From: Haliotis cracherodii
Lineage: Eukaryota
Direction: 5' to 3'
Length of the DNA: 64,000 nucleotides
Assembly (NCBI RefSeq): GCF_022045235.1
Contig: NW_027266269.1
Span: forward strand, 6,386,001 to 6,450,000
The notes beneath the pieces are model-generated. The model was given only the letters and a program-made list of their open reading frames with translations. It was not told where the DNA came from and made no database searches. The position numbers and the translations under genes are program-made. How positions within the stretch are numbered: position 1 is the first letter of the stretch; every line of letters begins with the position of its first letter. Shown here in pieces: positions 26,029 to 45,858 of the stretch.

Positions 26029-27229
26029 CCTGCTGCTACTGTGAAGAGGCAGCAACAACGTTCTTATCTTATTGCAAGGGAATATATTTCTACATACACC
26101 TGGATGTTAATCTGTTTTCTTCTAAGTTGAAACATAACGAGACAAAAAAGAGAAAGTTGAAAGAAATTGAGAAGAAGGTGTCCGCATTACGAAATACGTC
26201 AGGTGGAGAAATCCTTGTTCATCTGTATGGTCAAGACCCAGGAGACAGGTACCTTGGGCACTTTGACAGCTTCACAGACTCCTGCCTAAAGAATTTAATC
26301 CCTGACGGAAAACTGTTTACTGACGTTTATAAACGTGAGTGGTTGTGTGATGTTATTTCCAATGACGAAGGTCACCCTATACTTCTCCTCTCTGTAGAAA
26401 AATCAAAGTTTGTGACTACAGTACATTTCTACACAAAAGTCGCATCGGATTGCATGATTGAAAATGCGTCGACCACTGTTTTTGTCTCACTCCTGTCTAG
26501 AGATGTGAACAAACCAGTGAGAGAACCAAAACTAAGAGGACTTCACAACTTTTCGAAACGACTGCATGAAAACAGAAACATTGAACTTAAAAGTGTGTTC
26601 GTAAAGAAAGACCGTACATTTCGTGATATTTCTTCAGTTGTTGATTACATCTGGACAAATCTCAGATTCAGAGAAAATTTATGTTCCATGTCAAAACTTG
26701 AGAGAGGAGGTTCTTTCTTCGTGGGAATAAATGAAAGCAATGGAGAGCGAACATACGAATCAAAGGAAATAAATCCCAATGGTTTTCCTTGCCCCTGGAG
26801 TGTTGATGAGTTCCAAACGTCTTTGGAAGTGAAATTACAGTGTGACGCATCCTATCAAAGTCCAGAGGGCACTCTGACTTCAGTCCCCACCAGCATCATC
26901 ACGGTCGCACTGTACAACTCTCCTGTGCAGCCAGGTGCTAAAGTTTTAGAAATTGCAGTCGGATTTGCCGCGGGTATTGTATTCTATAATAAGAAGGGCC
27001 CGGAAACCTACACCATAGACAAAGAGGGACAAATTAGTAGAATGGAACATTGTGAATGGTTGGAGAAAATGAAAGCTTTTACTGTTGTTGACATAAAGTC
27101 GCAGTGATTTGAACACCATGTCTATCCACGGAAGTGACGCATCTTCATTTTCGTATCCTTCCTCTTTCTCTGACCAAGATTTCAAAGCTTTTGGTGGCCC
27201 TGCATTGAAATCCACCATTGCTGTTAGGG
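26029..27229 (+). CDS. SLFN: Schlafen core (SLFN/AlbA_2-type RNase) exon of copy B, with a +1 frameshift at ~27096-27105
   Basis: VSALRNTSGGEILVH (cf. SLFN CALLNSGGGVI), HENRNIELKS (E-x4-E-x-K, cf. ESQLVEFKQF), LCSMSKLERGGSFFVGINE (cf. VPAFANTGGGYLFIGVDD), GIVFYNKKGPETYTI..RMEHCEWLEKM (cf. AVFSEAPNSWIV..LTTEKWVGMM). Frame open 26025-27107; strong donor G|GTAAGA at 27229. 5' acceptor uncertain (26028 or 26126). Confidence 0.85.
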
Positions 27230-27559
27230 GTAAGAATGGTTGGCTTTGTTGTAATGATGTTTATTATATGTTAGTTTTAAGTTCAAATTCCTGTGTATTA
27301 TCGACAGTTCAATCAATAGTAAAGTACATGGTTTCTGACATGCATGGTCCATATGATAGTCATAATACATACCATTTATATAAATTATCACATGGACCAT
27401 TGTGATATCCATATCATGAATGCAGTAGCAACATTACCACAAACAAAATATGGGCGCAGTTTATTCAATATTGGTGGTGGTACCCAGGGTGAAGCTAGCT
27501 AGCAAAAGTAATATCCGAGTGCCTCTTTAAATTACCGGCACAACTCTGAACCCCAATCC

Positions 27560-27749
27560 ATGCGAGTAATCATTGATGAGCAACTCCCCTCCTTGATTCG
27601 GTCGACAAGCCATCGAAGCAACCTAGCAAATAACACCGTCAACAGCCGAGGAACTAGATCGCAGGGGAGATCATGCACGAAGGTAATAATCGACGAGCAG
27701 CTTCCCCACCTGCCCCAGTCAACAAGCCGTCGTCCAGCCACATTGCTCG
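27560..27749 (+). CDS. Probable linker exon of copy B with a duplicated VIIDEQLP motif (acceptor unclear)
   Basis: Two copies of VIIDEQLP differ only at synonymous positions; phase-1 donor G|GTATAA at 27749. Confidence 0.5.
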
Positions 27750-28139
27750 GTATAAGATAAGACACGACTCAGAGTTTATGCTTGGGATTGTAAGACTCGA
27801 GGAAAGAAAGACGTTATCTCCCTTTGAAGTGCCAGTTATTTTCTAAAAATGCACTTCTAAAGTAAGTGATATTAACAAAAATCTCATTTGCATGAACCAC
27901 AAAGTTGATCATTATGCTAAAAGTGATATGAATGAACATACTGAATTCGTGTTATCTAAAATTCAGCAGCACTTCATTGGGAGGTGGTAACTGTAGGTGT
28001 GTTGGCATAATGAAAATAATCAGGATTTGGGTTTATGTCAGCATTGTGAAAAAAACCACTAATCTTGTTACACTTTTTGTTAGTTTTTGCTGTTAGGTGT
28101 TTGTTTGTATGTCAGGTTAACCAGTTTTTCTTGTTTCAG

Positions 28140-28214
28140 ATTCAGACAAAACTGCACGAGTGCGTAGACCAACTTCATTAGTCGGGTCAGTGCACGAACA
28201 TGAGACTTTTAAAG
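28140..28214 (+). CDS. Copy B linker exon
   Basis: ttttcttgtttcag| acceptor and AAG|gtatgc donor; 75 nt, phase 1->1, open (DSDKTARVRRPTSLVGSVHEHETFKG). Confidence 0.7.
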
Positions 28215-28559
28215 GTATGCAAGTTATATTTCTTCAAAATGTTTCAAGTAACTTTTGACCAATTTCTGCAACCTGTCACTCTTGCCCTTCTTTTATGAGG
28301 AACTCTTAGAAGCCTAAATTCTACGTTCATATTTATTAATCACAATGTATTACATTGATCTTGTTAACGTGTGTTAGCAAGGTTGGTCATTGAACAAAAG
28401 AGTTCATTGAATTGTGCAGGGTCCGTTGCGTTTCCTGTCAATACCCCTTGCCCTTGCTCTAGTGGTCGTGGAATAAAGGACACACTCATTACTATCTTCT
28501 TTAAATAAACACCTGTGGGGACCCGCGGCAGATAAGAATGTGTCCTCAGCACCCATTGC

Positions 28560-31500
28560 ACAGGGGGGCAATCATTTTACGCTATGTCAACCCCCTTGAG
28601 AGTATAGTCACTTACTAACGCATCAAATTTACATATACCAATGTTACATTTTTTTATTTATTAATTTCAAAATATGATCTTAAAAAATGTATTTGTTTCT
28701 TTGTTGTTTAACGCCGCACTCAGCAATATTCCAGCTATATGGCGGTTTTTAAAAAACAAATGATTAAATGAGACCTCACGCTGTTAAAAATGTCCTTCAC
28801 ACTTGAAGCTTTGAAATATTTATCCCTTGCGATGGCACAATGAATGCAGTCAAGCAGGACATGCGTGACCGAGATTCTTTCATCACACGGGATACACATC
28901 GGTGGATCCTCACCTTTCAAAATATTTTCATGAGTGAGTGAGTGAATGAATATGCTTTACGCCGCATCAGCAATTTTGCAGCTAACCGCGGCGAGAAATG
29001 TCTTTTGTGTAATCATGTATCAACCAATACAATAAAAGTGATGTTAACTTTAGGGTTGTATAGATTGCCACTGAGGCATTGCTGGTTTTATGCGTCTCAA
29101 AGTAAGACAGGGTTCATTTGCCTCCACATACAAACTGTCAATGGATGATGTCCTAAATGCTCCAAGGCACAATTTGAAGTCCTTGGCTATATGACTTATG
29201 AGCTGAACCGTAAATGAACTACCATAGTCCAGTTTAGATCTGCTCAAGGTTCTATAGTTGTGCAAAAGTGTTTCTCTATCTCCACGCCATTTAGCATTTG
29301 AGACCATTTTAAGAATATGCTTTAAAAAATCTAGCTTCAAGATTTTTAATTTGAGGTATAAATGATAACCTATGATCAACGGAAATGCCATAAATCTTTG
29401 TTTCTTTGACCACTTTTATGGTATTATTATTTAAAGTCAATTCTGGATCTTTATGTACCTTCCGTTTAAAACTTAAGACCATTTATGTATTTTATTTAGA
29501 CAGAGCTGTAACTGTCTTTCAATGGTATTCATATTGACACCACGGCATGATATATTAAAATCATCAACAAATAACAAACAATCAATATTCATTTAAAACT
29601 TTAGCAAGACTGTTGAATTTTATTATAAAAAGCGTCACTGATAAAATGCTGCCCTGTGGGATCCCAATTTCCTGATCATATATCTCAGATAATGTGGAGC
29701 CCACTCGAACTTTAAATTTTCTTGTAAAAAAATAGTGATAAAATCAGGCATACTGCCACGAAGACCCATATTATGGAGATCTTTTAAGATGCCATATATT
29801 CATAATCAAAAAAAGATTGATACGCCATGATGTTTATTAATAAAACCATTGCATAGATATGACTCTGATCTAACGAGATGATCAATGGTGCTCCTCTGAT
29901 TCCTGAAACCGGACTGAATATCAGTTATCAAGTTATTAGAATCCAAATACCAGACAAGACGCGTGTTGATCATTTGTTCGATGGTTTTACAGCTTCAACT
30001 TGTTAAAGCTATTGGACCATGATTAGAAGGATTCGTGTGATCCTTCCCTGGTTTTGTCACAGGAATGATAGTAGCCTCATGCCAACAAGAGGGTCAAGAG
30101 ATATGACTCAGGTAGATGTTTCAATATTTGATAATGGATATCATCTGGCCCAGATGCTGTATCATCAGCTTCGTTTAGAGCCTCTTACAGTTCACACAAG
30201 GAAAAAGATTCATTATACTCTTCAGAACTCACGGATTTTAAATTAAGAATCTTCTGTACCTTCTGACTTTGATATCTTTGAAATTTTTTCACAGTTGGCA
30301 GACGATGAATATTTACTAATTGTCTCTGCCAGCTTATTAACGATGTCATTTTTGGAAGTTAATGTCTCAGTATCAGCTTTTAAGATTTGAACACTGCTTG
30401 TGGACCCTTTATCTTTCATCTTTTGAACCATATTCCATACTTTATTGATTGGATTACATGTAGTCAATTAGGAAACAAAATGTCTCCAGTTGCTACGTAT
30501 ATTTTGCTTGATGGTTTTGCTATGGTGCCATGGTGTACTAACATGTGGAGTTTTCGCGGTCTCGATGGCAATGTTGAGTATGGTATCAGAAAACAATTGA
30601 AGTTGGTCATGATCATTTATGAATTAATCAGCTTTCAGTTCAGTACTGCACAAAGTACCCAAAAGACAGCCAATCAGCCTTTGAAAATTGCCATTTGAAA
30701 ATGGAGGTATCCACACATGGAGAGACAGTGTAAAGGACGATAGGAAAGTGACCACAAATTATCATGAACAGACCAAGTAAACTCATTATTTGTGTGTTTG
30801 TTTGTTGTTTAACGCCGCACTCAGCAATATCCCAGCTATCGTTAACTCATTAAAGAGTGATGGACCAGAAATGGACATATCCAATGCTGCATTGAGGTAG
30901 GAGTTACTTCCGTCATTAAGCAGACACAGACTATGCTTAACAAGCATTTCGTCTTGTAGCTTTCCTTCGTCATTGTGATCACATGAACCCCATAAGGGGT
31001 TGTGACCATTATTAAGAAAAGTTTGGGAAGCTGGTCAATGAGATTATCCAGATCCCTAATTTGAAGCGCAGATGATGGAGGAGTATAATGGGCACAGAGC
31101 TATTGCAACATGTAAAGCTAAACGCACTGCAACAGCTTCCTTGAAAAGGAACTATATGCATCATACTGGCCCAACTAATATGAATAATCATCTTTTAGAA
31201 TGTTTCCTGGAGGCAAATTAACCACATGGTTATAATCGTTGGCTAGAAGTATGATTTCTTCAAAATTTGCTTTAACCCCACGACAATTCCATTGTATTAT
31301 TCATGGTTGGTGTGTGGATCGCTCCCAACCTTTTTCTTAGGAGAATGGCTCCTACAGTGGGTGTTCTGATTGACTGACACTTCCATGTCATCTGAAACAC
31401 CGGACAGCGGACAGCGTCTTGGCGTCCTTTTGTAAAACGATCACTTGAGCTTTTGTTTTTTTTTCAATAATTCACATTGACATTTTTCTTTTTCAAAGTG

Positions 31501-32410
31501 GTGAAGATGGTGTCTGAGTTTCAAATGATTTTGATGTAATATGTGAGGAGGATTTTGGTGACAGTAAAGTCTTGAGTTCACAATGACTCACCGGTTCTTC
31601 AGTATTTACCCAAACTGGACACTCTTTAGAGGAGTACATGTGAGGACCGAAGCAATTAACACATTCGAATTCACATTCACATGGCTGCCGTCATGATCTC
31701 CTCCTCCACAACGATAACAAGCGGCATTTTTTGTACATGTTTATAAACTTCTGACACTTAAAACACCTGAACGGATTAGGAACATACATGTCAATTCTCA
31801 TAGAGGAGCATCCTACTTTAATTGATTGAGGTAGCTTTTATTTGGAACATTAAATGTAAACAGGTAGGTTTTCGATGGTGAAAAGATTCCAACCTTCTAA
31901 AGGGTGAAACGCTTTGCCTCCACTACGACCCTGCATAGGTATCTGACTTACAATGTCATCTGTAGTTAGAACAGCAAGATTCTTATCTCTGTCTCTGATA
32001 ATGCCTTTGCTGAAGTTCAGGGACTTGTGTGGATAACATGTTATTCCTCATGTTCAGTGTCATCTGTATGATAACCTTTTTGTTTTGGGGGTTTTGAGCC
32101 ATGGAGGGTCAACAAGGACGATGCCAACAGGTGGCTCAAAGGATACCAAGAGGTATACTCAAGCAGAAACATTACAAAGAATGAACTACAACACTTTCTA
32201 GCAACATATAAACATACATATTTGGTTTGAATACAATTTAAGCAGAAGTAATATTTGCCAAATGAAAAACTAAATTGAGTCAAATCTGTGCTGATAAAGG
32301 TAACCCACAGGGCTCGGCATGATTAATAGGACCAGGCCATCCTACCACCTGTCTAGGTAAAGTTAGGGCAAAATGGTGTATGGGTCAAAGGAACACAACT
32401 CCTTGACCTA
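28560..32410 (-). mobile_element. Degraded near-full-length Nimb/I-clade LINE within a copy B intron
   Basis: 5' UTR homologous to 39930-40020; ORF1 YVPNP/CCHC knuckles (~31650-31800); APE IQWNCRGLKANF (~31300); RT/post-RT (RSKLDYGS, GAFRTSSIDSLYVEA); C-terminal CIPCDERISVTHVLLDC. Confidence 0.85.
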
Positions 32411-33402
32411 TTTAATAATATTATTTCTCATTTAATACTTGTTTTATATAAAAGAAACAGAACTGCCAAATACATTTTGAAACACGTGTTTTGTAATTAA
32501 TAAATGATCTCTAAATATTGGTAGAATAAATTGGATAACCAAGATTGTTAGTGGCTGTATCCCTTGAAGTAGTGTAAGAGTTGCTGGCTACCTATAGCTC
32601 GTTTTTTTATGTATTGTTCTGTCTAGTGATGTATTTTTATGGTTCCATGCTAGGTTTACATCATAATCTGTGAGAAGACATGTATTTATTATATATAAGC
32701 TTTGAAAGTCACGATATGGCTGAAATATTGCCGATGTGACTTTAACTTTTAAGTCACTCACTCACTCTCAAGAGAGATAAACGCGGCAAACACTTGTGAG
32801 CCTGGCCACTCGATCTAGTTCGTCGCCACTTACGAGAAGCATGCATGGTTGCTGAAGACCTCGTCTAATCTGGATCGCACAATCAACTGATTGGAAAACT
32901 AGCTGACAGTGTGCGACAGGAACGTTTACATTTGTATCACCATACATCCCCTCGATTTTAAATTATTTTGCTGGAAGCTCATGATAGATTGAAGTTCAAG
33001 GTCAGTGGGGACATGAAGTACTAACGTAGTCATAAGGGTTACTAGAGGCATTTTCAAAGTTATACTGCATAGATCAAACGTTTTCCAAAACCATTTGTGA
33101 TGGTTTTACACGAGAAGTGCTCACTAATGTGTTGTCTAGGCAGATATTAGTTGTAATGCACTGGCATGTATTTTGCAAAGCCAAACATGATGAATTCAAA
33201 CCATCCTATTAGTTGTTTTGAGATGCTGCATTCTGGATGAACGATAAATTTAGAAAAAAATATTGTTGCTGTCAGCTGTTTCTTGGTTCGGAAAAGTCAT
33301 GGTTCATTTCAACATTTCTGTTTGGAAAATCTGGGGCCTACGGGAAAAAGTGGCTGCCTTATTGTTTATCAACGTGTTTCAGAAACATTGTTCTACTTTC
33401 AG

Positions 33403-33480
33403 ATACTCAAATGTCAGCCGAGTTGCATCTGTCTACCACATTCACGAGTAGCTTGTTTCAGAAGCACATATATGATTCAG
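33403..33480 (+). CDS. Copy B linker exon
   Basis: ttctactttcag| acceptor and CAG|gtatgt donor; 78 nt, phase 1->1, open (DTQMSAELHLSTTFTSSLFQKHIYDSG). Confidence 0.65.
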
Positions 33481-34814
33481 GTATGTTAACCCAATGAATA
33501 ACAATAACATATTCTTATTTGCGAAAAAGATATGTATACCATATAGTTTTCAAAACTCAAGACAACACTCCCATGTAATTTAACTGATCGCTGTTTTTGC
33601 TCTATTTAAATCTTTAATGTCTGAAGCTAAATCGTGTTCCTCATTCATAAATCGTAAGCATTTTGGCTTGCGTAAACCTTTATCTCACGTTGTCCATCTA
33701 CCTGTCTGTCTGGCCGTCATAATCTTTTATATGTTACACATATTGACTGAAACCACAAGTCCTGAATTTTTTCAATGATGATTCAGCAAAAATGTCTCTA
33801 CCATATCCCAACCAAATTCTGATTCCATGGCCACAGTATCGAAAATGTTACTTGTTGCCCAACATTCGACATTTTGTTCATCATCATGAGATGCGAAGTT
33901 TGTATGATGTATTAACATACATGTTTTGGGAGCTATGTGTCTTTCCCTGCTTCGGCCTTTGGCCTTTGGTAGTTCAATGAAACTTACAGTATACAGTGTG
34001 GTAGTTCAATGAAACTTCCAGTATACAGTATGTCTTGTAGGTTTGGGCCCAGATCGGAAATGGTATTGAGTGACCTACGTGTAAGGTCAATGTCACATTC
34101 GTAGAGTAGATTATTATGCTATTTGAATACGATGCAGATGTTTTGTCTTATCTGGGCACGTCAAGTAAAGCAACAAAACCCTTTCCACATTCATAAGAAA
34201 TCTCTGATATCAGTGGTAGGCCACTGTGACCTACTCCCGAGTGAGTGAGTGAGTTAATATTTAACGTCGTTTCGGCATTGTTTCAGCCATATGGCTAGGA
34301 GAACAAGTTTTAATAGCAACAAGCATGTCATAAGAATACATCAAATACATAATGTTTAAAAGCAAATTTGCCAAGTATATTTTAGCATAACATTTCTATA
34401 TAAACCTGTTTAAACATGGGCTTTCTTGCTACCAGGAACCAGAGCTAAGCAACCTTACTGGGGATCATGGAAACTTACTCCTGCATCCTGCAAATACGTC
34501 AGTATTTTAGCTACCAATGATTGTGCACAATGATAGCCAATATTGGAAATTATCACCTTTGAGTTGGCTTAAGACCAATTTTCAAAGAGTAGCATGTGCG
34601 TTATTTGCTTGTTCCGTTGATTTTCACCTTGGCACATCATTGTCGGTTGATATGCTACATAGCCCTTTGGAATGTTGAAATACTTGTCACTGACACTGAA
34701 GATCAATTTCCTTATCAAGGTCATACACTAGAAATATATACGATGGTGAAGTGTTTACTATAGAATAAAGTTTGTACATATCATACATGTGATGGTTGGG
34801 TATGGGAATGGTAC

Positions 34815-35038
34815 GACATCCGGGAAGATCCAGGTTAGAATAGGTCTTCAGCATTCGATACCTGTCGTAGGAGGCAACTGACGAGATTGGGTGTTCAAGC
34901 TCGCTAACGTGCATGCCATCTCATCTAAACGTACATCGATGACCGATGGATTGTCTGGTCCAGACACGATTATTTAAAGACCGCCGTCATATTGCTTGAA
35001 CGTTACTGAGTGCGGGGTTAAACAACAAACAAGAAACC
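34815..35038 (+). mobile_element. SINE family A (diverged)
   Basis: GAAGATCCAGGTTAGAATAGGTCTTCAGCA head and GCGGGGTTAAACAAC tail. Confidence 0.8.
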
Positions 35039-35399
35039 CAAAATGGTAAGGTTTTGAGCGTTCTTCACTTATGGTCACGGTCCTGAGGCAGATCGCAAAT
35101 GGAATTAACTTATGTTCCATAATATGTTAGCTAGAGGCAAGGTTCAAACTAAAGGTATTGGTGTCACACCGTTAGTCTGAATGGTATGTGGGCGGGGACT
35201 AATAGAAATTACTGAGAGGGGTTGCTCCTTTTTTACAAGTACTTGCAAAATCTTTTGTAGGTTTATTAAGTCTTAGGCATATGTTATTGGAACACATTGT
35301 ATGGAAAGTATGACATATAAAACTCATCAAACATATGAATGTCTCCAAATTTGGAAGTACAATTGCTATTCTTAGTTTGAAGCAAGTGGCATTCTGTGT

Positions 35400-35635
35400 A
35401 AAGTCGTCATGATTCAAAGAGCGCCATACGGCACAGAAGCTGTTTGATCAAAGTTATAGCATTCAAGGCCTCAGTAAAGGTTTCCAAACGATTTGTGGTC
35501 GATACGTGGAGGATGTTTCCGTATTTTAGGTTCAGGTGAACAATTGACATGCCTTTGCATATGTTTTATGACGGGTGCAACTGGTAGTGCAGGAGACGAT
35601 CACCTTTTCGCGAACACCTGGCAACATCACTGACA
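35400..35635 (+). mobile_element. Penelope-like 3' end fragment
   Basis: QKLFDQSY-like peptide followed by ACGGGTGCAACTGGTAGTGCAGGAGACGATCACCTT..GAACACCTG, resembling the motif near 18430 on the opposite strand. Confidence 0.45.
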
Positions 35636-35693
35636 GTGATTCATGAACACATGTTCAAGATATAGTCGGAATGGTACAATCGACAATGCTTTT

Positions 35694-35853
35694 GAGCGAG
35701 TTAGTGAGTATGGTTTGACTCCGTTTTTAGCAATTTCACGGCGGGGGACACAAGAAATGGGCTTCACACATTGTACCCATGTCGGGAATCGAACCCGGGA
35801 CTTCGGCGTGACGAGCGAACGCTTTAACCACTAGGCTACCCGGCCGCACCCCT
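35694..35853 (-). mobile_element. Short tRNA-derived SINE family D
   Basis: Reverse complement GGTAGCCTAGTGGTTAAAGCGTTCGCTCGTCACGCCGAAGTCCCGGGTTCGATTCCC has A and B boxes; second copy at 62867-63020. Confidence 0.8.
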
Positions 35854-35929
35854 TTTGTATGAGACTCTTTATGAATATGGAAAGGTTTATGTTGCTTTTA
35901 TTCTTAGAGGTATTTTTGTAATGGAATCA

Positions 35930-36201
35930 GTGAACGTACCGGTTAGAATAGGTCTTCCTCAGCCCATGCTTGTTGTAAAATGTGACTATGCTGGTCCTGA
36001 GGGGCGACTAATGGGATCAAGGATCAAGGGGTCAGGATCGGTGACTTGGTTGAAGATGCATGTTATCGTATCCAAATTGCTTGGATCGATGCTCATGATA
36101 TCATTCACTGAATTTTCTGGTCCAGACTCGATTATTTACATATCTGGAATAGCTGGAATATTACAAAGCGTGGCATTAAGCAGCAAACAAACGAACGAAC
36201 A
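35930..36201 (+). mobile_element. SINE family A (diverged)
   Basis: GGTTAGAATAGGTCTTC..GGTCCAGACTCGATTATTTAC. Confidence 0.8.
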
Positions 36202-36350
36202 AATTGTACCAGGAGGTTCAAAGTTATCTTCCAATAATCGCAGGTACTTCAAATACAAATCGGCACAGTACATATATCATCTTTACTTTGAATGTTAAGA
36301 GTTGGAATGAGCTATAATCACAGTATAAAATGATTGTTTTCGTATTTCAG

Positions 36351-37059
36351 GTGCATTTGTCATCTATCCTAAATGTATGCATAGGATGTTGTCAAGAGAG
36401 TACCCAAAGATTCTGTCAGTACTTGAAGCAACGTATCGACTTGGAGCATTTATCTACGTCGGATCGTCTTTGCAATGTCTGTTTCTTGGAAATCAACAAT
36501 CTTTTAACAAAATCCACACTAACTTGATATGCGACATGTGCATTTTTCCAAAGAACAAGCCAGTCACCTTATTCACTGTTGCACGAGACAACATAGTGCA
36601 GTATCAACTCAACAGGTACAATTTACAAATGAGAAATAACTTGGAAGCATGTATAGACGGGGGAAGAGTTGGCTTCAAAGCCTTAGCTGGAGTTGTAACG
36701 CCTGAAGACTTTATAATCGGAGGAAAATTTGAGCGCCTAATTGCTGAGCAACAATCGGTGACGAAAATTCTTACAGAGACCCAGATGATTTCGTCTGTTG
36801 ACACCTTTCTACAGAAGCAAGCAGCCTGCAAGTTCATACAACGGTTTCGTGCAATTCCTGAAGAAACCGTATATCTAGTTCACGACCTATTTGAAGACTT
36901 TATTGAACTCATGGAAGACACCGAAAAAACAATTGTGTATTCCAAATGGTCAGGAAATACAATGTCTCTAATTTGTGAACTAGCTTACAGGTTAGCTTTG
37001 ATTGGCCACACATCCCTCCATTCGAAAACAGATGTGAAGGCAGAATTTGAAGAACTAAG
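36351..37059 (+). CDS. SLFN: Copy B exon: Schlafen SWADL-like linker domain plus start of a degenerate helicase domain
   Basis: tttcag| acceptor phase 1 and AG|gtatgg donor phase 2. PKCMHRMLSREYPKI (cf. PESLWRDLISEHRGL), GAFIYVGSSLQCLFL (cf. GILIFSRSWAVDLNL), NLICDMCIFPKNKPVTLFTV (cf. GVICDALLIAQNSTPILYTI), IVYSKWSGNTMSL (cf. FVHGLPGSGKTIM). Confidence 0.8.
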
Positions 37060-37928
37060 GTATGGTTTTGATTTATAATTGTCTTCACTTAAAACTTGTG
37101 AATATGGTGTAGTTCAAGTTCATGCATTCAATACGCTCTTGAAATTACGTGTTCATAATTTCTTGGGTATTGTCGACATACCATTAGTGACTAGACAGGT
37201 GGTTTCATGACAAGCAAAAACGTCAGCAGCCCAGCCCCCACTTTTTCCTGATGGCCCCAAAACGTTTCACATGGTCATTCCATGTTAAAAAGGGTCCACC
37301 AGAAACGCACCAAATCATGTGACAACTGACCTCACCCACGTTTATCACTATTTTCATCGATGATCCCAAATGTTGTCTAAACCAGTACAACATGAAAGTC
37401 CTACGTAGGCTTAATGTAACACTGTAGCATACCCCAGCACACATGACAAGTACAGAAGAAAGTGCTTAAACAATATTGCTCCTTGGAAAATATTTTGTAT
37501 AAGCATGCATAAAAACCAAGAACTTCATGCAATGAAACTACTTAAGTTATTTCATGAGTGAAAGACCTTCCATGGGACCTTCACATTGACATAACCGTAA
37601 CATATGACACTTTGGTTAAAAACAGCTCACACAAGGGTTGAATTGTTTGAGTGAAACGGAAGGAAGGTCATTGTAGTCAGGATATTGAGTAAATCATGTA
37701 GCCAAATCATTTAAGTTTGCAAGGACGTGATGTGATTTTCAAATGCACCATCACTGTCAAATTAAGAAAGTAACATTGTAATAGATGTTACTGTGCACAC
37801 AAACATACTGACTACATATCACATGAACATCTTTCGTTATATTAGATGGGATGTAGTTTTGTTAAGGTAAGCTAGGCAACACACCAATTCTTGGAAATGT
37901 CATTTCAAAATTATGCCTATGTCTTCAG

Positions 37929-38047
37929 GAAAGCAGAAAACATTTCCATATCGATCACTTATGACAAGAGTGTCACTGATGAGAACTTGCAAGAAGACGA
38001 CGTATCCTTGTCATCGTGGAAAGGTTGTACGATTATATTTCGAACGG
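37929..38047 (+). CDS. Copy B exon (degenerate Walker-B region)
   Basis: cttcag| acceptor and |gtaagt donor; phase 2->1, in frame with the previous exon; paralog of 101-219. Confidence 0.85.
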
Positions 38048-38559
38048 GTAAGTGACTTTCACTTTCTAATAATTATGTAGAATCTAAATAATAAAACGGA
38101 AAGAATAGAGATAGGCTAGGGGAGATGGGTATATCATGTAGCCAGACCACGGATGTTTACAAATTAGGGTCCTGGGAAAAAACGGACCAGGGGATCGTGA
38201 AGCATGTCTGCCGAATCTGACAACAACATAGGCAAAATGGTAGACAGGCCGCCAAAACAGAGGTCACAAGATCGCCAAAAAATGTTTCTCGCTTGTAAAA
38301 ACTCCATCAGGCAGTAGACACCCGTGTCGGCACACAATCGGACCCTATCATCAGGAAGCTCATAATCGTTTGTTCATTTGATCAAGGCTTTGTGTACATC
38401 ACACGACCCTGTCGGAATTCCGGGTTAAAATAGGTCTCCAGCTTGTTGGATCGGGTGGTCAGGCATGATGACTAGGTTGATGGTGTGACATTGTTCAATC
38501 TCATAATTCTATCTAACTTTTTTCTTTGTTTTCTGTGATAACAACTGGTTCTTCAGGAG

Positions 38560-40160
38560 GATTCTAAGACGAAGTCTGAGTCTGCCTAAACACTATCGGG
38601 TGGTGATGCAGACTGACCGTCAGATATACCGATGTTAGAGATAGACGCAGAAGTGACCCATGTCGGTTTGACACTGAACAGATGAAGTGGTTTTAACAGG
38701 CTTTGCCACAGCAGCAGAGTAGTTCATAGTTGAAGGAGATCTTGACTGACTGACAAGCTTCCTAGCATCTGCAAAAGATGGGTTTTTTTTACAAATTGGT
38801 TTCAGAATTTGCGTTTCTGGTTGATACACTGGGCAGGATTTGGAAGAGGCCATGTGGGCCTCACAGTTGCTACACTTTAGATCTCGACTACAGTCTGTAC
38901 TGTCATGGTTGCCAGCACAACGACTACAAATGATAGAGAGTGTACAAGTTTTTGAACCATGTCCAGACTTTTGAAACTTATAGCACCAAAGTGGATTGGG
39001 GACATACACCTCCACTCCGATGTTGACATAACCAGCTCTAGTTGAGGTCGGAACCGTTTGACGGTCCAAAGTGAACAGATATGTGTCCGTGTTAACGATT
39101 TTTTTACTTTTCATCCTTTTGGGTGAAACGTTTGACTGACTGCACTCCTTGAATTTGAAGTTCTGAAACAATTTCAGCTTCTGATATATCCCCCATTGAA
39201 CGTGTCCTGTCACGGACAATACCACGACAAGAGTTGAGAGTCCGGTGAGCAGAATCAACAACCTTCACATTAGCAAACTGGGTGATTGATAATAAATTGA
39301 AAGATAGCTGCTTTCGCACACATTCTACCAAAAGAGATCCACTGCTCTGCCGTGTCACGTATTTTTACATCCCCGCAATAGCCATGGACAGCTTTAGATA
39401 TAGCGAAAGGGTTCAATTTGATGGGTTCATGATCTGCAGCTTCAATCACAAGGAATTGAGCCCAGCAATCAACATGTGTTTCAGTCTCATCAGACGAACT
39501 TGTATCTAAATGTCTTCGTTTAGAACCAGAGTGATTTTGAGCCATGGTGAAAGAAAATATTTCAACAACCCTGCTCCGCACCCACCATGGAGTGTCAACA
39601 AGGACAGTGTTAAATTCATCGGATGTCCATGATGTAAATACCAGGGATACGGGGCTGTTATACGCCAGTGAATATGACACAAATAGCAATATTTGTATAC
39701 CAAATTAAATGCCCTACTGGTTCTGGCCATGACAAGAAAATGGATACATATTGAATTTGGAGGTCAACAACACCAGATTGGCCCATGAGCCACCGCCTTC
39801 TGGCTTTGGACACAAGGCAAAAATTTATATCATAACATTTTCATGAACAACATTCAAATACAGCAATCAACTAATGCAGAAGAATTTCAACATGAATGTT
39901 TTCCATACACCGGCCATGGCGTGACCAGCCGATTGATAGAACCGGGCCCATTCTACCACCCGTCTAGGTGAAGTCAAGGTCAAAGTGGTGTGTTGGGCAA
40001 AAGGAACACTGTTCCTGGTTCCAGTGCCCTCAACCAACAGACTCCCTTCCTCCACCGATGCGGGCGCAACCCAAGGCAAACAAGTTGCCCAATTTTGTCG
40101 CCTCTTACAACAATCAATGAGGTGCTGAGGACACATTCTTCCCCGGGTCCACACGGGGGA
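38560..40160 (-). mobile_element. Nimb/I-clade LINE 5' half (5' UTR plus frameshifted gag-like ORF1)
   Basis: ORFs 39270-39689, 39104-39358 and 38635-39261 join into FLVIE..LNPFAISKA..SGSLLVEC..HRTLNSCRGIV..YVPNPLWCYKFQKSGHGSKTC with three CCHC-type knuckles. Confidence 0.9.
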
Positions 40161-41666
40161 GGCTGTTCTGACATGACCAGTAATGGGATGTCCTCCGATC
40201 TTTGTTTAGCGGCAGCGAGAACTTAGATCTGATTTTAATGAGATTGGACATTGTTTAGTTTGTTGTCTAACGCCTCACTCAGCACTAGTCAAGCTATATA
40301 ACGGCAGTCTGTATGTAGTCGAGTATAAATACAAGCAGAGCATCGTCCATCATATCAAGATTTGTTTCTTAATTTTGCTATTAAGAAAGTATGATATGCA
40401 ACAAAATATATGTGAGTGAGCTAAACTTTAACGCCACATCGGCAATGTCGTAATCTGAATAAATTATACATTAATGATAAATACACTTAGACTGTGTTAA
40501 ACGTGTCGCCGATGGATTATATTATCATATCTTTTCAAACGATTGTTAGACAGTACTAAAATGGACTATATCGCCAGCAGCCAAAGGCAGGTCACCATTA
40601 TATAAAGACAAATGCAAAATGAATGTAGGAGATGTTAGTAAAACTGCATTGATAATGTGATTTCCACTTGTCGAATGTGAGAGAAACATTGCAATAACTA
40701 TAATGCATTGGTTAATGAATGTGGTCGACGAGGTACATAATTAGCAAAATACTCACTGATTTACGTCTTTAGTAGAGTAGAGTAAAAAGAAATTTGCAAC
40801 CTGATTTGTGGAAGTGATAACTTTGACGCTGCTTGGTGTGTAGCAAATCTATTTATTACCGTCAGAAATGAAAGCTTTTGGAACACGTTTCAATTGTTGA
40901 ATATGGTCAGTAGGAATACAAAGAGACATAGCAGTGAAATGAAGTAAAAGGGGTCCCTACAGGAAAGGTACAGAAAACACAAGTCTGCTCAGGGCGATGG
41001 TTAGACCTGCAGCCTGTAGTCGGCAGCCTACAGTCCTCTCTGGTGCAAGTGGGGATTCTTTGCCATCTGTGATATTCTTTGCCATCTGTGATACCTGCTG
41101 ATAGCGGTCTCTGAGAAGAGACACAGCGATGAAGGGCCCTGAGCAGGGTGTGGTATTTTGTTGTTGTCCGGATCTGGAACTGTCGAGAACGCTGTTAGTT
41201 TGTCGTTATCTTACTGATATGGTCGCAGTTAAGTCGCCTGGAAAATCATGAGCTGACAATCCTGTTTGCAAGATCCCTTTTGCCCGCCCCCATTCACCTG
41301 CGGTCAAACTATGCATTGTTTCTCCATTGACAGTAGAGCAGCCTGTCTGACTGAAAGACATACTGATTCAGAACCATTTTGAACGTATCTTATTCTTGAA
41401 TTCCTGCACAATGTATTGGTGTCAAATGTCATACTGCCAGATACCAATGTAGAACAGGTCGCCTACAATCATTTCCACTTGCATGGTGCATTAAAACATC
41501 TTTGGTACGTTATGGTTACTTTAGACAACATAATGCATACGGAGACTTTCTTTTGCCTTTCAGTATTGTTAACTTTCGACGAGGATGGTTCATGTCACAC
41601 AGAATATACAATGGGTTTAGATGAAGAATTCATGTGTTAAAAATTTAGTAGTGTAATTTTTTTCAG

Positions 41667-41924
41667 GGATTGCAGCTGCTCGAAGAACCTTGGCATCAGC
41701 TGTTGTAAACCGCAGTGCAAAGATAGGGGATGAAGAAAGACGCAACAGACTGTTGGACCTTGTTTGTTTGAACTTCAAAACGTTGGAGAAACAATTGGAA
41801 AACTTCCTGAGTCGTGCTGAAGCTAAATCGCAGGTAGCAGAACTTGAATCATTAACTACATCTCTAAAAGACAGAATGACGGAGATTGTCAGTGTAAACG
41901 AGCAACAGGCGTATCACATGCAGA
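41667..41924 (+). CDS. Copy B helical/coiled-coil exon
   Basis: tttttcag| acceptor phase 1 and |gtaagt donor; ORF 41690-41953; paralog of 3328-3591. Confidence 0.85.
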
Positions 41925-42269
41925 GTAAGTATATGTTTACAGATGTTGATTGATGAGTCAATTCAATTCAATCTGTGTCTTATTACGCATTACGTAATGC
42001 GTTTGACATATTTAGGCAGCCATTTACTGCTCTTTGGCATATTTATGCTTAGAAACTGGTTGATATAAGGAGGCTTTATGTTGCGGTCATCTGTCACTCG
42101 TTCATTTGTCTATGAAGTATAAACATGTTCATTGTCGCTTCAGGCATTGTAGTAAATTTAAAAAAAAGGTTAAAAACACATTACATGATGAAATTGCCAA
42201 GACATTAGATCTCAACAGGGAAATTCTGTCAACATCAGTCTATTCTTTACGCATCTATCATTTTGACAG

Positions 42270-42327
42270 CACCATGTGTTGCAGCTCATGTGCCTAGGTC
42301 ACTGACAACGAAGACTGGGAAGACACA
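42270..42327 (+). CDS. Copy B short exon
   Basis: ttttgacag| acceptor and |gtaggt donor; 58 nt, phase 1->2, open; joins the terminal exon in frame. Confidence 0.7.
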
Positions 42328-42367
42328 GTAGGTATACATTTTACTTTAGGTATATTACCAGTCAGTG

Positions 42368-42576
42368 AGACCCGTGAGGATCCGGGTTAGAACAGTTCTT
42401 CAACAACCCATGCTTACCGTAAGAGGCAACTATGCTTGTCGTAAAAGGCGACTAACGGGATTGGGTTGTCAGGCTCGGTGACTTGGTTGATCCATGTCAT
42501 CATATACCAATTGCGTAGATTGATGCTCATGACGTCAGATTCAGTTTAAGTCTGCACTCAGCAAACAAGCAAACAA
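42368..42576 (+). mobile_element. SINE family A, internally deleted
   Basis: GACCCGTGAGGATCCGGG head; short AGTGAG duplication at the flanks. Confidence 0.8.
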
Positions 42577-43364
42577 GTGAGTTATCTGAACTGACCCGAT
42601 ACTAGGTAAGTCCGTAAACGTATATATTTAATGAAAATGGTCAATCATTTTTTTATTCGAAATGTCTACATCCAGAACACTTTTTGTTCAGCACTTTTCC
42701 TCAATATTGTTATTTATCTAAAACCCTACTTATGTTGCTACTAGTGAACCTATAACATTACTTAGCAATCAATAATCTGGCTGGGCATTCATAAATCACT
42801 CTAATTATCATACAGTAAAATATAATGCTATGATACACCTTTAGGGCATTGAAGATTTTTAGTATTACTGTTTAAAGTTCAGGATCACAGCCAGAATAAT
42901 TCCACCCTTATGTTCAAGCATGAAAGTTCATGTAGCTATCCTTTTTCACATTAGTGCTATTGGGTTTTCCCTCTCAAAGTGAACTCGGCTTCAAAAGAGG
43001 CTATTACCAAAATGTAACACAAAACAATTTAACTTCTGTACTTCATCCCGATTGCACTTGAACTAACCCGAATACCGTGGGTAATGCAATGGAGTGGTTA
43101 AGATAAGGAGAAAGAGGAAAGCTTCTTTGTTAAGTATTTTCACTTCATACAATGTGGCCATACACATGTAATTGCAATGCCTTTGCTCTCGATGATAAAT
43201 AGTTGTTGAAAGTTATTCCTAAAACTGGTATTCAAGAAAATAAATATGCAATAAATTGATGTATGTGTTTGTTTCTTCATGATGCACGTATGAATGATCC
43301 AATGATGTGGCATCAATTAAATTGCCTAGAATGAGTAAAATGTTTTTTTTTGCCTCTGCTGTAG

Positions 43365-45858
43365 CTTTGAAGATGGTACAGTGCAATATGATTCTGACAT
43401 CGATTTTGGGGCACCACAACGCAGTAATGAAGTGTTTCTGGAGGAAATAAAAGAAACACGGAAAGAGCAAGATCCTGCTGAAGATTTGGATCATATGATA
43501 CCTCGGCACAACACAGATCTGGAAGAGGCAACGGGCAAATCATCTGCTCAACAAAGTAAGCAAACTTTGAATGAGTCAGATAATACTATATTTGGTGTAC
43601 ATAATAACAATTACATCAATAGATGGCTGAGTATGCACAGTTTACCAGTTAACAGTAGAGACCTGGAAAAAGGTTCACGCATCACGAAAGAAGACTCCCA
43701 AACACCCGGCAGAGATCCAACCTTTTCAAATACGTTAGAACATACTGCTTCAGACTCAAACCAAAACGGAATGGCTGCGAATTATCGGGTCGCCCAGCAT
43801 CAAGACGAACAACAGGCAAGTAGACAACAACCCTGTCTTCGACAACCAAGAAAACATTCAAAGACCACGCCCCAAAGGGAACAAAGGTACACAGGAGAAA
43901 AACCATTCCCTCAACAAAGCAAACATCCCACAACACAGATGGTAACAAGACCCACTACAGGCCGTCCCTCTTCTCAGGACATTGCACTTACTAGGGTTAG
44001 TTCAGACACCACACGCCAAGATCAACGTCTGTTTGGTTTAGAACAACCATTCCCTCAACAAAGCAGAAATCCCCCCAAACGGAATGAAACAACTCCCACT
44101 ACAGGCCGACCCTCTTCTCAGGACATTGCACTTACAAGGGCTAGTTCAGACACCACACACCATGATCAACGTCTGACTGGTTTAGAACAACCATTCCATC
44201 AACAAAGCAGAAATCCTACAACACAGAAGGAGACAAGATCCACTACAGGCCGACCCTCTTCTCAGGACATTGCACTTACTAGGGCTAGTTCAGACACCAC
44301 ACGCCAAGATCAACGTCTGACTGGTTTAGAACAACCATTCCATCAACAAAGCAGAAATCCTGCCTCACAGAAGGAAACAAGATCCACTACAGGCCGACCC
44401 TCTTCTCAGGACATTGCACTTACTAGGGCTAGTTCAGACACCACACGCCAAGATCAACGCCTGACTGGTTTAGAACAACCATTCCCTCAACAAAGCAGAA
44501 ATCCTGCCACACAGAAGGAAACAAGATCCACTACAGGCCGACCCTCTTCTCAGGACATTGCACTTACTAGGGCTAGTTCAGACACCACACGCCAAGATCA
44601 ACGCCTGACTGGTTTAGAACAACCATTCACTCAACAAAGCAGAAATCCTACAACACAGAAGGAAACAACTCCCACTACAGACCGACCCTCTTCTCAGGAC
44701 ATTGCACTTACTAGGGCTAGTTCAGACACCACACACCATGATCAACGTCTGACTGGTTTAGAACAACCATTCCCTCAACAAAGCAGAAATCCTGCCTCAC
44801 AGAAGGAAACAAGATCCACTACAGGCCGACCCTCTTCTCGGAGAAATCCACTTACAAGGGCTAGTTCAGACACCACACACCATGATCAACGTCTGTTTGA
44901 TTTAGAACAACCATTCCCTCAACAAAGCAGAAATCCTACAACACAGAAGGAAACAAGATCCACTACAGGCCGACCCTCTTCTCAGGACATTGCACTTACA
45001 AGGGCTAGTTCAGACACCACACACCATGATCAACGTCTGTTTGATTCAGAACAACCATTCCCTCAACAAAGCAGAAATCCTACAACACAGAAGGAAACAA
45101 GACCCCCTACAGACCGACCCTCTTCTCGGAGAAATCCACTTACTCGGGGTAGTTCAGACACCACACACCAAGATGAACGTCTGACTGGTTTAGAACAACC
45201 ATTCCCTCAACAAAGCAGAAATCCTACAACACAGAAGGAAACAAGACCCACTACAGGCCGACCCTCTTCTCAGGACATTGCACTTACTAGGGCTAGTTCA
45301 GACACCACACACCATGATCAACGTCTGACTGGTTTAGAACAACCATTCACTCAACAAAGCAGAAATCCTGCCTCACAGAAGGAAACAAGATCCACTACAG
45401 GCCGACCCTCTTCTCGGAGAAATCCACTTACAAGGGCTAGTTCAGACACCACACACCATGATCAACGTCTGTTTGATTTAGAACAACCATTCCCTCAACA
45501 AAGCATTCCTGGTAAAGGTTCACATTTGGAACCAACATCAAAACATGGTTTTCATCAAAGGGGTGAATTACGCTTCACTTATCATGGGACACCAAGAGAC
45601 AGAAGATCACTGCAATCAAATTATGATCACATGTTTAAGTCTACTGACGTCACAACACACTTATCAAGAGCCAAAAGCCAACTCAACATAAACAAGGCAC
45701 CCATTGACAAGGACATCGTCACAGATAAAGTTGTCAAAGCGCCAAAAGTCACTTTGATATCAGTAAGGCCGCTGAGGGACAGAAGGGAAAACCTCCGAAT
45801 AATTCCCAAATACATTGTGAAAAGAAGGAGTATAGCTTTGACGGATACTAATAATTGA
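43365..45858 (+). CDS. Copy B terminal exon: ~830-aa Ser/Thr/Gln/Arg-rich tail with 48-aa repeats
   Basis: ctgctgtag| acceptor phase 2, in frame with ORF 43381-45858; C-terminus homologous to the copy A terminal exon. Confidence 0.85.
43897..45504 (+). repeat. Coding 144-bp tandem repeat, 11 full units plus a partial unit
   Basis: GAACAACCATTC recurs at 44041, 44761 and 45481 (720 = 5 x 144). Unit EQPFPQQSRNPTTQKETRSTTGRPSSQDIALTRASSDTTHHDQRLTGL. Confidence 0.97.

What the first reader, a model, noticed from the sequence alone, without database searches (positions are those of the whole stretch)
26029..45858. Unusual Schlafen architecture: RNase core, SWADL-like linker, dead truncated helicase, coiled coil and giant repeat tail
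Seen: exons 26029/26127-27229, 28140-28214, 33403-33480, 36351-37059, 37929-38047, 41667-41924, 42270-42327 and 43365-45858 join through canonical GT-AG sites with matching phases (1,1,1,2,1,1,2). Known: vertebrate long Schlafens (SLFN5/11/13/14) consist of an RNase core cleaving tRNA/rRNA, a SWADL linker and an SF1 helicase. The motifs of the first two, plus a helicase start, appear here in the same order. Inference: a mollusc long-type Schlafen whose helicase has been replaced by a helical bundle and a disordered repeat tail. I do not recognise this architecture from described Schlafens; it is a candidate invertebrate antiviral or translation-control nuclease system.
Basis: partly seen in the sequence, partly recalled or inferred. 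Interest (0 to 1): 0.9.

Follow-up and report, generated by a model that had tools for sequence, protein, structure and literature searches.

The report
Split Schlafen gene pair in abalone
The abalone locus does hold a Schlafen RNase core and a Schlafen linker domain, but as two back-to-back reading frames separated by a conserved stop and a conserved new start codon, a layout repeated at dozens of loci in this genome, so it is probably a two-protein ("split") Schlafen and not one long protein.

Summary
Every boundary is GT-AG, the phases are 1,1,1,2,1,1,2, and each exon lies in a block conserved with a tandem paralogous unit 38 kb upstream.

The single long protein is not supported. ORF1 (25620-25638 + 26029-27107, 365 aa) is a complete Schlafen core:
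- family profile against SLFN11-N, E 2e-19;
- AlphaFold pLDDT 93;
- the top 25 Foldseek hits are all Schlafen cores;
- the E..E.K and G.xE acidic residues are kept.

ORF1 ends at a stop that the paralog and four Haliotis rubra RefSeq proteins share. Ten bases later, ATG 27118 opens ORF2 (about 1300 aa over eight exons). ORF2 holds an acidic Ser-rich start, a true Schlafen linker fold (Z 12-14 to SLFN5/11/12/14 linkers, next hit 4.5), a doubtful P-loop stump, a helical exon and 11 x 48-aa repeats.

Thirteen paralogs show the same stop-then-ATG layout (A at -3), with gaps of 10-286 nt and all three frame offsets. That argues against frameshifting and pseudogene decay.

The genome holds at least 118 cores and at least 95 linker exons, mostly paired. 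Other first-stage notes of this scan flagged similar split modules elsewhere in this genome.

No RNA data could be obtained, so one bicistronic mRNA versus two transcripts stays open.

The parts
25620..25638 (+). 5' coding exon of ORF1: ATG + 6 codons + 1 nt (MTEWID..), donor GTAAGT. A short overlapping upstream ATG (about 25609) runs into a TGA.
   Evidence: Matches the N-termini MAEWIES/MAGWIDS of the H. rubra proteins once joined to acceptor 26029.
26029..27107 (+). Main exon of ORF1: complete Schlafen core domain (365-aa protein with the 5' exon), ending at TGA 27105-27107.
   Evidence: Pfam SLFN_AlbA_2 in 30 of 47 family members. Profile against PDB SLFN11-N E 2.3e-19, with SLFN14/12/13/5 also hit. 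AF2 pLDDT 92.9. Foldseek top 25 are all Schlafen cores. Stop shared with the paralog and H. rubra proteins.
27108..27117 (+). 10-nt spacer between the ORF1 stop and the ORF2 ATG.
   Evidence: The spacer is 13 nt in the tandem paralog and 17-286 nt in other paralogs.
27118..27229 (+). First coding segment of ORF2 (MSIHGSDASSFSYPSSFSDQDFKAF...), context ACCATGT, donor GTAAGA, phase 1.
   Evidence: ATG, Ser/acidic composition and the SD(E/Q)D(I/F)..F motif are conserved in paralogs in variable frames.
28140..28214 (+). ORF2 exon 2 (75 nt).
   Evidence: GT-AG sites and open frame. Conserved block and splice sites in unit A, indels +6 and -3.
33403..33480 (+). ORF2 exon 3 (78 nt).
36351..37059 (+). 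ORF2 exon 4: Schlafen linker domain (about residues 1-160 of the exon), then a poorly modelled helical part holding a degenerate P-loop-like 'SGNT'.
   Evidence: AF2 pLDDT 70 overall, 80-90 over residues 1-160. Foldseek top 13 are all linker-bearing Schlafens. VIA Z 11.8-13.9 to the linker residues of SLFN5/11/12/14. At least 95 such exons in the genome.
37929..38047 (+). ORF2 exon 5 (119 nt).
   Evidence: dN/dS 0.25 against unit A.
41667..41924 (+). ORF2 exon 6, charged helical or coiled-coil-like segment.
   Evidence: Only weak Pfam coiled-coil hints. dN/dS 0.50.
42270..42327 (+). ORF2 exon 7 (58 nt). This is the least supported exon: the donor in unit A seems to lie elsewhere.
43365..45858 (+). 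ORF2 last exon (830 codons): unique N-part, repeat array, and a conserved C-terminal part of about 110 aa.
   Evidence: Open frame. The C-terminal part is 38% identical to the 155-aa tail of unit A at window 4944-5411.
43896..45505 (+). 144-bp (48-aa) tandem repeat, 11.2 copies, Ser/Thr/Pro/Gln/Arg-rich. Present only in this copy.
   Evidence: TRF. Unit A has at most one degenerate unit.
3330..5411 (+). 3' exons (helical exon and short tail) of the upstream paralogous unit A. Its core lies at genome C6:6374501-6375562, outside the window.

Best explanation
The locus encodes a split Schlafen: two separate polypeptides from two consecutive, co-oriented reading frames.

ORF1 (365 aa) is a free-standing Schlafen core, the pincer-shaped endoribonuclease domain that cleaves tRNA/rRNA in vertebrate SLFN11/13/14. 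It keeps the acidic metal-binding residues (E182, E187, E237 of the exon translation), so it is probably an active RNase.

ORF2 (about 1300 aa) starts 10 nt after the ORF1 stop at its own ATG. It carries:
- an acidic Ser-rich N-terminus with a conserved short motif;
- the Schlafen linker domain;
- a possible vestige of the helicase P-loop;
- a helical segment;
- a disordered repeat tail expanded only in this copy.

Inferred mechanism: the ORF2 linker domain docks in trans on the core, as the linker does in cis in SLFN5/11/12. It would then regulate or target the nuclease. The variable C-terminal module of ORF2 (here coiled coil plus repeats; nSTAND3 NTPase plus ankyrin in a paralog) would act as adaptor or sensor in an expanded innate-immunity-type family.

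Shown here: domain identities, the conserved stop and start, purifying selection, and the pairing of core and linker exons across the family. Inferred only: binding in trans, RNase activity, an immune role, and whether both ORFs share one mRNA.
For: Core identity.

Linker identity. Domain limits come from PMC8789055 (SLFN5 core 1-336, linker 337-552). The SLFN11 active site E209/E214/D252 comes from PMC11615386.

Conserved stop:
- unit A ends with TAG two codons earlier;
- four H. rubra RefSeq proteins of 369-370 aa end within two residues of our stop;
- RefSeq proteins from H. asinina and H. rufescens end exactly like the core ORFs of two other split loci.

Conserved start: 13 paralogs have an ATG with A at -3 that opens a Ser/Asp/Glu-rich frame 10-286 nt after the core stop. 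Frame offsets are 0 (3 loci), +1 (7 loci) and +2 (3 loci). In at least two loci, stops in the gap exclude frameshifting or readthrough.

Selection: all exon indels between units A and B are multiples of 3. dN/dS is 0.32 for ORF1 and 0.25-0.63 for the ORF2 exons.

Pairing: at least 95 linker exons were found. By eye, roughly 80 of them lie 0.8-10 kb downstream of a core exon on the same strand.

No AATAAA or ATTAAA lies between the ORF1 stop and exon 2, a weak hint that the ORF1 transcript continues into the ORF2 exons.
Against:
- No annotated protein holding the ORF2 tail was found among proteins of 454-1444 aa. No own-species annotated ORF1 protein of 198-630 aa was found either. A long, frameshift-corrected RefSeq model over 1444 aa at this locus therefore cannot be excluded.
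- A fused relative exists: H. rufescens XP_048251734 has core, linker and ApoL in one CDS.
- The complex prediction for core plus linker gave no verdict.
- Translating a second long ORF after 28 upstream ATGs needs reinitiation, an IRES or a separate transcript. None of these was shown.
Confidence: 0.7

Rival explanations
1. One long Schlafen polypeptide. The ribosome shifts +1 at the stop (CAG UGA U, antizyme-like), or an RNA-level event removes the stop, giving a core-linker-tail protein of about 1660 aa.
For: In this copy and in unit A the ORF2 frame is open 8-26 nt before the stop, so a +1 shift is formally possible. A fused core-linker relative exists in H. rufescens. The searches could not see proteins over 1444 aa.
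Against: The frame offset differs among paralogs (0, +1, +2). In two paralogs the gap holds stops in the ORF2 frame. All 13 keep an ATG with A at -3, which a read-through product would not need. RefSeq CDSs in other species stop at the core end. The only phase-compatible GT sites before the stop (27037, 27052) lie in codons kept for protein reasons and are absent from other paralogs.
Confidence: 0.1
2. Two ordinary neighbouring genes with separate promoters and mRNAs. The ORF2 gene starts transcription inside or just after the core exon. The proteins may or may not work together.
For: In many paralogs the gap is 137-286 nt, room for a transcription start. Eukaryotic ribosomes rarely reinitiate after a long ORF. 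RefSeq annotates the cores as stand-alone CDSs.
Against: With 10-20 nt gaps in three loci, the ORF2 5' UTR must overlap the core coding sequence. No poly(A) signal follows the ORF1 stop before exon 2. By-eye pairing at roughly 80 loci, at down to about 30% identity, argues for functional coupling. This rival differs from the best explanation only in transcript structure.
Confidence: 0.3
3. A decaying pseudogene: an ancestral long Schlafen disabled by a frameshift, with the downstream exons drifting.
For: Stop and frame change at the domain boundary. Degenerate P-loop. A runaway repeat expansion in the tail.
Against: The arrangement is shared by paralogs and by another species. dN/dS is below 1 in every exon tested, all exon indels are in frame, and splice sites are kept in exons 2-6.
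Confidence: 0.04

Closest known systems
Vertebrate subgroup II Schlafens (human SLFN12, mouse Slfn3/4): core + linker
   Same: Same two domains in the same order. The core fold matches at Foldseek E about 1e-14 and the linker at VIA Z about 13 to SLFN12 387-559.
   Different: Here the two domains lie on separate reading frames with a conserved stop and start between them. The SWAVDL motif is replaced by a non-conserved SSLQCL. Sequence identity is only 10-15%. ORF2 adds an acidic N-terminus, a helical exon and a repeat tail.
Vertebrate subgroup III Schlafens (SLFN5/11/13/14): core + linker + SF1 helicase
   Same: Core and linker folds. Acidic active-site residues aligned to E209/E214/D252 of SLFN11.
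   Different: No helicase. PF09848 finds nothing in the whole genome. Only a P-loop-like 'SGNT' ('SGTGAT' in a paralog) follows the linker, and it is not significant by profile. Not a single polypeptide.
Subgroup I Schlafens (mouse Slfn1/2) and poxvirus v-Slfn: core only
   Same: ORF1 alone is a core-only protein of about 365 aa.
   Different: It is coupled genomically to a linker-bearing partner ORF.
Bacterial Schlafen defence proteins fused to diverse sensor domains (Nat Microbiol 2026, PMC13056530; abstract only seen)
   Same: A Schlafen nuclease combined with variable accessory modules. In this abalone family the partners carry nSTAND3 + ankyrin, ApoL, or coiled coil + repeats.
   Different: The bacterial modules are fused to the nuclease. 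Here most sit on a second ORF joined through the eukaryote-type linker domain.
Metazoan dicistronic genes translated by reinitiation or internal initiation (from my own knowledge, e.g. Drosophila stoned, mammalian SNURF-SNRPN)
   Same: Two long ORFs in one orientation with a very short spacer.
   Different: A shared mRNA is not shown here. The layout recurs across an expanded family rather than in one gene.

Membership tests
Schlafen core domain (Pfam PF04326 SLFN_AlbA_2 / Slfn core) | Sequence-profile match across the whole core of about 340 aa | tested here: met
   The single sequence is below the Pfam cutoff (22.6 against 25.3 bits). However, 30 of 47 family members hit PF04326 (best E 6.8e-8), and the family profile hits SLFN11-N at E 2.3e-19 over positions 25-360, plus SLFN14/12/13/5.
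Schlafen core domain (Pfam PF04326 SLFN_AlbA_2 / Slfn core) | Pincer-shaped two-lobe fold | tested here: met
   AF2 pLDDT 92.9. The top 25 Foldseek PDB hits are all Schlafen cores, E 4e-15 to 5e-10, TM about 0.6.
Schlafen core domain (Pfam PF04326 SLFN_AlbA_2 / Slfn core) | Acidic active site (SLFN11 E209, E214, D252) | tested here: met
   HENRNIELK and GGSFFVGINE align to ESQSIEFK and GGSLFIGVDD. In the family, E182 is kept in 44/47, position 187 is E in 20 and Q in 23 (E here), K189 in 45/47, and E237 in 44/47. The third residue is E, not D, and its exact equivalence rests on the profile alignment only.
Schlafen core domain (Pfam PF04326 SLFN_AlbA_2 / Slfn core) | tRNA/rRNA endoribonuclease activity | not testable with these tools
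   Needs a biochemical assay.
Long Schlafens (subgroups II/III) | Linker domain fold after the core | tested here: met
   VIA Z 11.8-13.9, rmsd about 3 A over 141-162 residues for most rows (up to 6.6 A over 188 in the top row), to SLFN5 384-563, SLFN11 404-573, SLFN12 387-559 and SLFN14 401-568. The next hit has Z 4.5. Foldseek top 13 are all Schlafens.
Long Schlafens (subgroups II/III) | Conserved SWAVDL motif in the linker | tested here: not met
   At the approximately equivalent position, estimated from the alignment offset, the sequence is SSLQCL. Paralogs have HSL, FRL, SGL, PSV and others.
Long Schlafens (subgroups II/III) | Core and linker on one polypeptide | tested here: not met
   TGA at 27105 and a +1 frame change. 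The stop and a downstream ATG are conserved in 13 paralogs with variable frames. RNA was not examined.
Long Schlafens (subgroup III) | C-terminal SF1 helicase with Walker A/B | tested here: not met
   PF09848 gives no hit in the whole genome. No Pfam hit in any ORF2 exon. The stump profile has no significant PDB match. The Walker A lysine is absent ('SGNT').
Programmed +1 ribosomal frameshift genes (antizyme type) | Conserved shift site and a constant frame relation between the two ORFs | tested here: not met
   Offsets 0, +1 and +2 occur among paralogs. Stops lie in the gap in two loci.
Dicistronic mRNA with termination-reinitiation | Both ORFs on one mature mRNA | not testable with these tools
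The only indirect hint is that no poly(A) signal lies between the stop and exon 2.

The most novel reading that the evidence does not exclude
Abalone carry an expanded family of two-component Schlafens. The RNase core and a linker-bearing partner are made from one dicistronic mRNA by reinitiation a few nucleotides after the core stop, and they assemble in trans. The partner's swappable C-terminus (coiled coil/repeats, STAND NTPase-ankyrin, ApoL) would act as the pathogen sensor or targeting module. This would be a eukaryotic counterpart of modular bacterial Schlafen defence systems, and a rare case of conserved dicistronic translation in a metazoan immune family.
Probability: 0.3. Interest if true: 0.8.

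Novelty: new variant of a known kind. Interest (0 to 1): 0.62.

Why it matters
Schlafens are studied almost only in mammals, as single-chain interferon-induced RNases. I found no paper describing invertebrate Schlafen architecture. Two full-text searches returned only a passing mention in a mussel transcriptome study.

A family of at least 118 members, in which the nuclease core and the linker domain are routinely encoded as separate but tightly coupled reading frames, would show two things:
- the linker can act as a detachable adaptor;
- accessory modules are exchanged on the partner rather than on the nuclease.

It would also offer a natural system for asking what the linker domain does, which is still unclear for SLFN5/11/12. 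If the two ORFs share one mRNA, it is also a testable case of reinitiation after a long ORF in an animal.

Tried and rejected
- Single-sequence searches of the core and linker against PDB sequences found nothing. Family profiles were needed.
- Pairwise BLASTP of the linker exon against long relatives found nothing. A profile later found the linker in P0033 and P0084.
- The search for homologous proteins with the linker exon returned only two unspliced genomic Logan ORFs. With the tail N-part it returned nothing. With the core it returned only H. rubra proteins. All three searches are length-limited.
No RNA evidence was obtained.
- Complex prediction (core + linker exon) gave no verdict: score 0.00, and the alignments were not used. 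This is no evidence either way.
- A profile of the putative helicase stump against PDB gave no significant hit (best E 0.21).
- PF09848 (Schlafen helicase) gave no hit in the genome.
- A search for an own-genome ortholog of the fused H. rufescens protein P0033, to see how a fused form bridges the junction, found no close copy (best 38% identity).
All searches were exon by exon, by reference.
- Rejected readings: recent frameshift pseudogene, assembly error, and antizyme-like frameshifting. Reasons are given under the rival explanations.

Full report
**Source and setting.** The window is G000:C6:6386001-6450000 of a 1.18-Gb genome. Contig C6 has the same length (40,864,218 bp) as the contig that carries a Haliotis cracherodii RefSeq protein. 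All close protein relatives come from Haliotis species. The genome is therefore an abalone, very probably H. cracherodii.

**Checking the observation.**
- All eight proposed exons have AG acceptors and GT donors. Each is open in the frame that the stated phases 1,1,1,2,1,1,2 require.
- A paralogous unit A lies 38 kb upstream, with its core at C6:6374501. A blastn comparison with it gives collinear conserved blocks that coincide with every exon: 25552-27275, 28010-28320, 33336-33499, 36323-37077, 37909-38075, 41628-42274 and 45549-45725. Most intron sequence does not align.
- In the aligned exons 2-6 the splice sites are kept, and all indels are multiples of three.
- dN/dS between the two units is 0.32 for the core, 0.49 for the linker exon, 0.25 and 0.50 for exons 5 and 6, and 0.63 for the first ORF2 segment.
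- The tail repeat is 144 bp x 11.2 copies at 91% matches. So the exons are real coding exons under constraint.

**The 'first exon' holds two reading frames.**
- The core frame runs from acceptor 26029 to TGA 27105-27107. The chain to the downstream exons uses the +1 frame.
- The start codon of the core protein sits in a 19-nt upstream exon (25620-25638, donor GTAAGT). Joined to 26029, it gives MTEWIDT-CCYCEE..., which matches MAEWIES-CCDCEE of H. rubra XP_046549566. ORF1 is then 365 aa.
- Four H. rubra RefSeq proteins of 369-370 aa, 74-76% identical, end within two residues of our stop.
- Unit A ends with TAG two codons earlier. The stop is therefore native and conserved, not a recent frameshift or an assembly error.

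**ORF1 is a Schlafen core.**
- The single sequence only grazes Pfam SLFN_AlbA_2 (E 1.6e-4). However, 30 of 47 aligned relatives hit it.
- The family profile matches pig SLFN11-N (7fex) at E 2.3e-19 across the whole domain. SLFN14, SLFN12, SLFN13 and SLFN5 follow.
- The AlphaFold model has pLDDT 92.9. Its top 25 Foldseek PDB hits are all Schlafen cores (E 4e-15 to 5e-10), followed by AlbA_2-type bacterial domains and the SAMD9 tRNase domain.
- The motif HE(182)NRNIE(187)LK(189) aligns with ESQSIEFK of SLFN11, and GGSFFVGINE(237) aligns with GGSLFIGVDD. SLFN11 uses E209, E214 and D252 for Mn-dependent tRNA cleavage (PMC11615386).
- Within the family, E182, K189 and E237 are nearly invariant. Position 187 is E or Q, and it is E here. 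An active RNase is plausible but untested.

**ORF2.**
- ATG 27118 (context ACCATGT) lies 10 nt after the stop. It opens a frame that runs through donor 27229 and exons 28140-28214, 33403-33480, 36351-37059, 37929-38047, 41667-41924, 42270-42327 and 43365-45858. That is 3903 nt, or about 1300 aa by arithmetic. Every search was exon by exon.
- No Pfam family hits any exon.
- For the large exon 36351-37059 I built an 11-row alignment from paralogous exons. Its AlphaFold model is good over residues 1-160 and poor beyond.
- The top 13 Foldseek hits for that model are exactly the Schlafen structures that include a linker: SLFN14, SLFN11, SLFN5 and SLFN12 (E 2.5e-6 to 1.7e-3). The next hit has E above 0.1.
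- VIA-align gives Z 11.8-13.9 to SLFN14 401-568, SLFN12 387-559, SLFN5 384-563 and SLFN11 404-573. Most rows have rmsd about 3 A over 141-162 residues. The first unrelated chain has Z 4.5.
- These ranges fall inside the published SLFN5 linker (337-552) plus the helix that anchors the helicase (PMC8789055). The exon therefore encodes a genuine Schlafen linker domain.
- The SWAVDL motif is not kept. SSLQCL stands at roughly the equivalent place, and paralogs vary there.
- The end of the exon has a strand / small-residue loop / helix pattern. It reads '..VYSKWSGNTMSLICELAYRL' here, '..VKADSGTGATTLLLEVACRL' in one paralog and '..SSGGRTLIREVATRL' in another. This looks like a Walker A without its lysine. 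A profile of the segment finds nothing significant in the PDB, and the Schlafen helicase Pfam model finds nothing in the whole genome. The 'dead helicase stump' remains a plausible lead only.
- The repeat array is specific to this copy. Unit A has a 155-aa tail with at most one degenerate unit, but shares the last roughly 110 residues at 38% identity.

**One protein or two?** I compared the junction in other paralogs of the genome.
- In 13 loci, the core ORF ends with a stop. Then, 10-286 nt later, an ATG with A at -3 opens a Ser/Asp/Glu-rich frame. Several carry a motif like SDEDIxC.F, SDGEIPCCF or SDQDFKAF, and the frame then reaches a donor.
- The frame offset between the two ORFs is 0 in three loci, +1 in seven and +2 in three.
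- In two loci, the gap contains stops in the ORF2 frame up to a few codons before the ATG.
- A conserved initiation codon in a good context, with no conserved frame relation, is what independent initiation predicts. Programmed frameshifting, readthrough or decay do not predict it.
- RefSeq proteins from H. asinina (368 aa...RLPPWII) and H. rufescens (406 aa...CILCKS) end exactly like the core ORFs of two of these split loci.
- I therefore read the locus as a split Schlafen that makes two polypeptides.

**Transcript structure is open.** Indirect hints are weak:
- No AATAAA or ATTAAA lies between the stop and exon 2.
- Twenty-eight ATGs precede 27118 on a putative common mRNA, so leaky scanning is out.
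- With 10-20 nt gaps, a separate ORF2 transcript would have to start inside the core coding sequence.

**Family context.**
- The core has at least 118 matches in this genome.
- The linker profile has at least 95 matches.
- I compared the two coordinate lists by eye. Roughly 80 linker exons lie 0.8-10 kb downstream of a core exon on the same strand. Some clusters, such as the ten copies on C20, are cores without a detected linker.
- Most public relatives are annotated as proteins of 310-440 aa, that is core only.
- The partner's C-terminal module varies. One paralog carries an nSTAND3 NTPase and ankyrin repeats after the linker exon.
- H. rufescens XP_048251734 is annotated as a single protein with core, linker and an ApoL domain. 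Fused forms therefore also exist.
- Other first-stage notes of this scan describe split or 'bicistronic' Schlafen modules with ankyrin or STAND partners elsewhere in this genome. I treated these as leads and checked only the one example above.

**Mechanism (inferred).** In SLFN5 the linker packs against the N-lobe of the core and is held there by the connecting loop (PMC8789055). If the abalone linker does the same in trans, ORF2 would be a detachable regulatory or targeting subunit of the ORF1 nuclease. The conserved acidic N-terminal peptide might replace the covalent connection. The single complex prediction returned no verdict and is not evidence either way. An immune role is inferred from three things: the massive lineage-specific expansion, the STAND/ankyrin/ApoL partners, and what Schlafens do in vertebrates and bacteria.

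**Novelty.** Full-text searches for Schlafen with mollusc, Haliotis or invertebrate found no description of such genes. The only mention was that 'Schlafen proteins' rise in infected mussel gills. The domains are known. What is new is the split, conserved stop-start arrangement and its scale. I rate it a new variant of a known kind, with moderately high interest. The rating is limited by the missing RNA and protein evidence.

Noticed in passing
window 25600-25640: The ancestral start (ATGGCAGAG, as in H. rubra MAEW...) now runs into a TGA after 5 codons. An insertion of about 10 nt supplies a new in-frame ATG at 25620. Unit A shows a similar shift. The ORF1 start is thus preceded by a short overlapping upstream ORF.
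   Followed up: partly
L024:5079-7001 (G000:C78:50701578-50703500): In a paralogous split locus, a 641-aa open frame after the linker exon carries an nSTAND3 NTPase domain (E 5.7e-24) with an intact GEGKT P-loop and ankyrin repeats. This is a Schlafen-linked NLR-like partner.
   Followed up: partly
protein P0033 (H. rufescens XP_048251734, 798 aa): Annotated single protein with a Schlafen core (46-374), linker domain (424-553, profile E 4e-11) and an Apolipoprotein L domain (561-699, E 6.7e-12). This pairs a nuclease with a pore-former-like module.
   Followed up: partly
protein P0084 (Batillaria attramentaria KAK7475777, 723 aa): The linker domain (51-278) precedes the core (349-691). This is either a permuted order or a gene model merging the end of one tandem unit with the start of the next. 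Either way, the family exists outside abalone.
   Followed up: no
H. rubra LOC124265948 isoforms X2, X3, X6 (P0097, P0095, P0096): These 'isoforms' differ over their whole length (87-94% identity), including the first six residues. They are tandem paralogous cores grouped under one gene. This may mean the RefSeq transcripts share non-coding exons.
   Followed up: partly
window 38635-39689 (-), 28300-31000: Retroelement remains sit in the introns: a gag-like ORF with a CCHC zinc knuckle (Pfam E 2.3e-4) and further ORFs that I took for retroelement remains without testing them. Short interspersed repeats are shared among introns (e.g. 35941-36199, 42352-42532, 49837-50000).
   Followed up: no
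window 53859-54824 and 54936-55367 (+); 21596-22222 (+): Open frames of 321, 143 and 208 aa with no significant Pfam match. The only weak hit is DUF7513 (E 2.7e-5, below cutoff) for the last one. Not examined further.
   Followed up: no
units A and B, ORF1 versus ORF2 exons: Synonymous divergence is lower in the core (dS 0.24) than in the ORF2 exons (dS 0.40-0.54). This could reflect gene conversion between the tandem cores.
   Followed up: no
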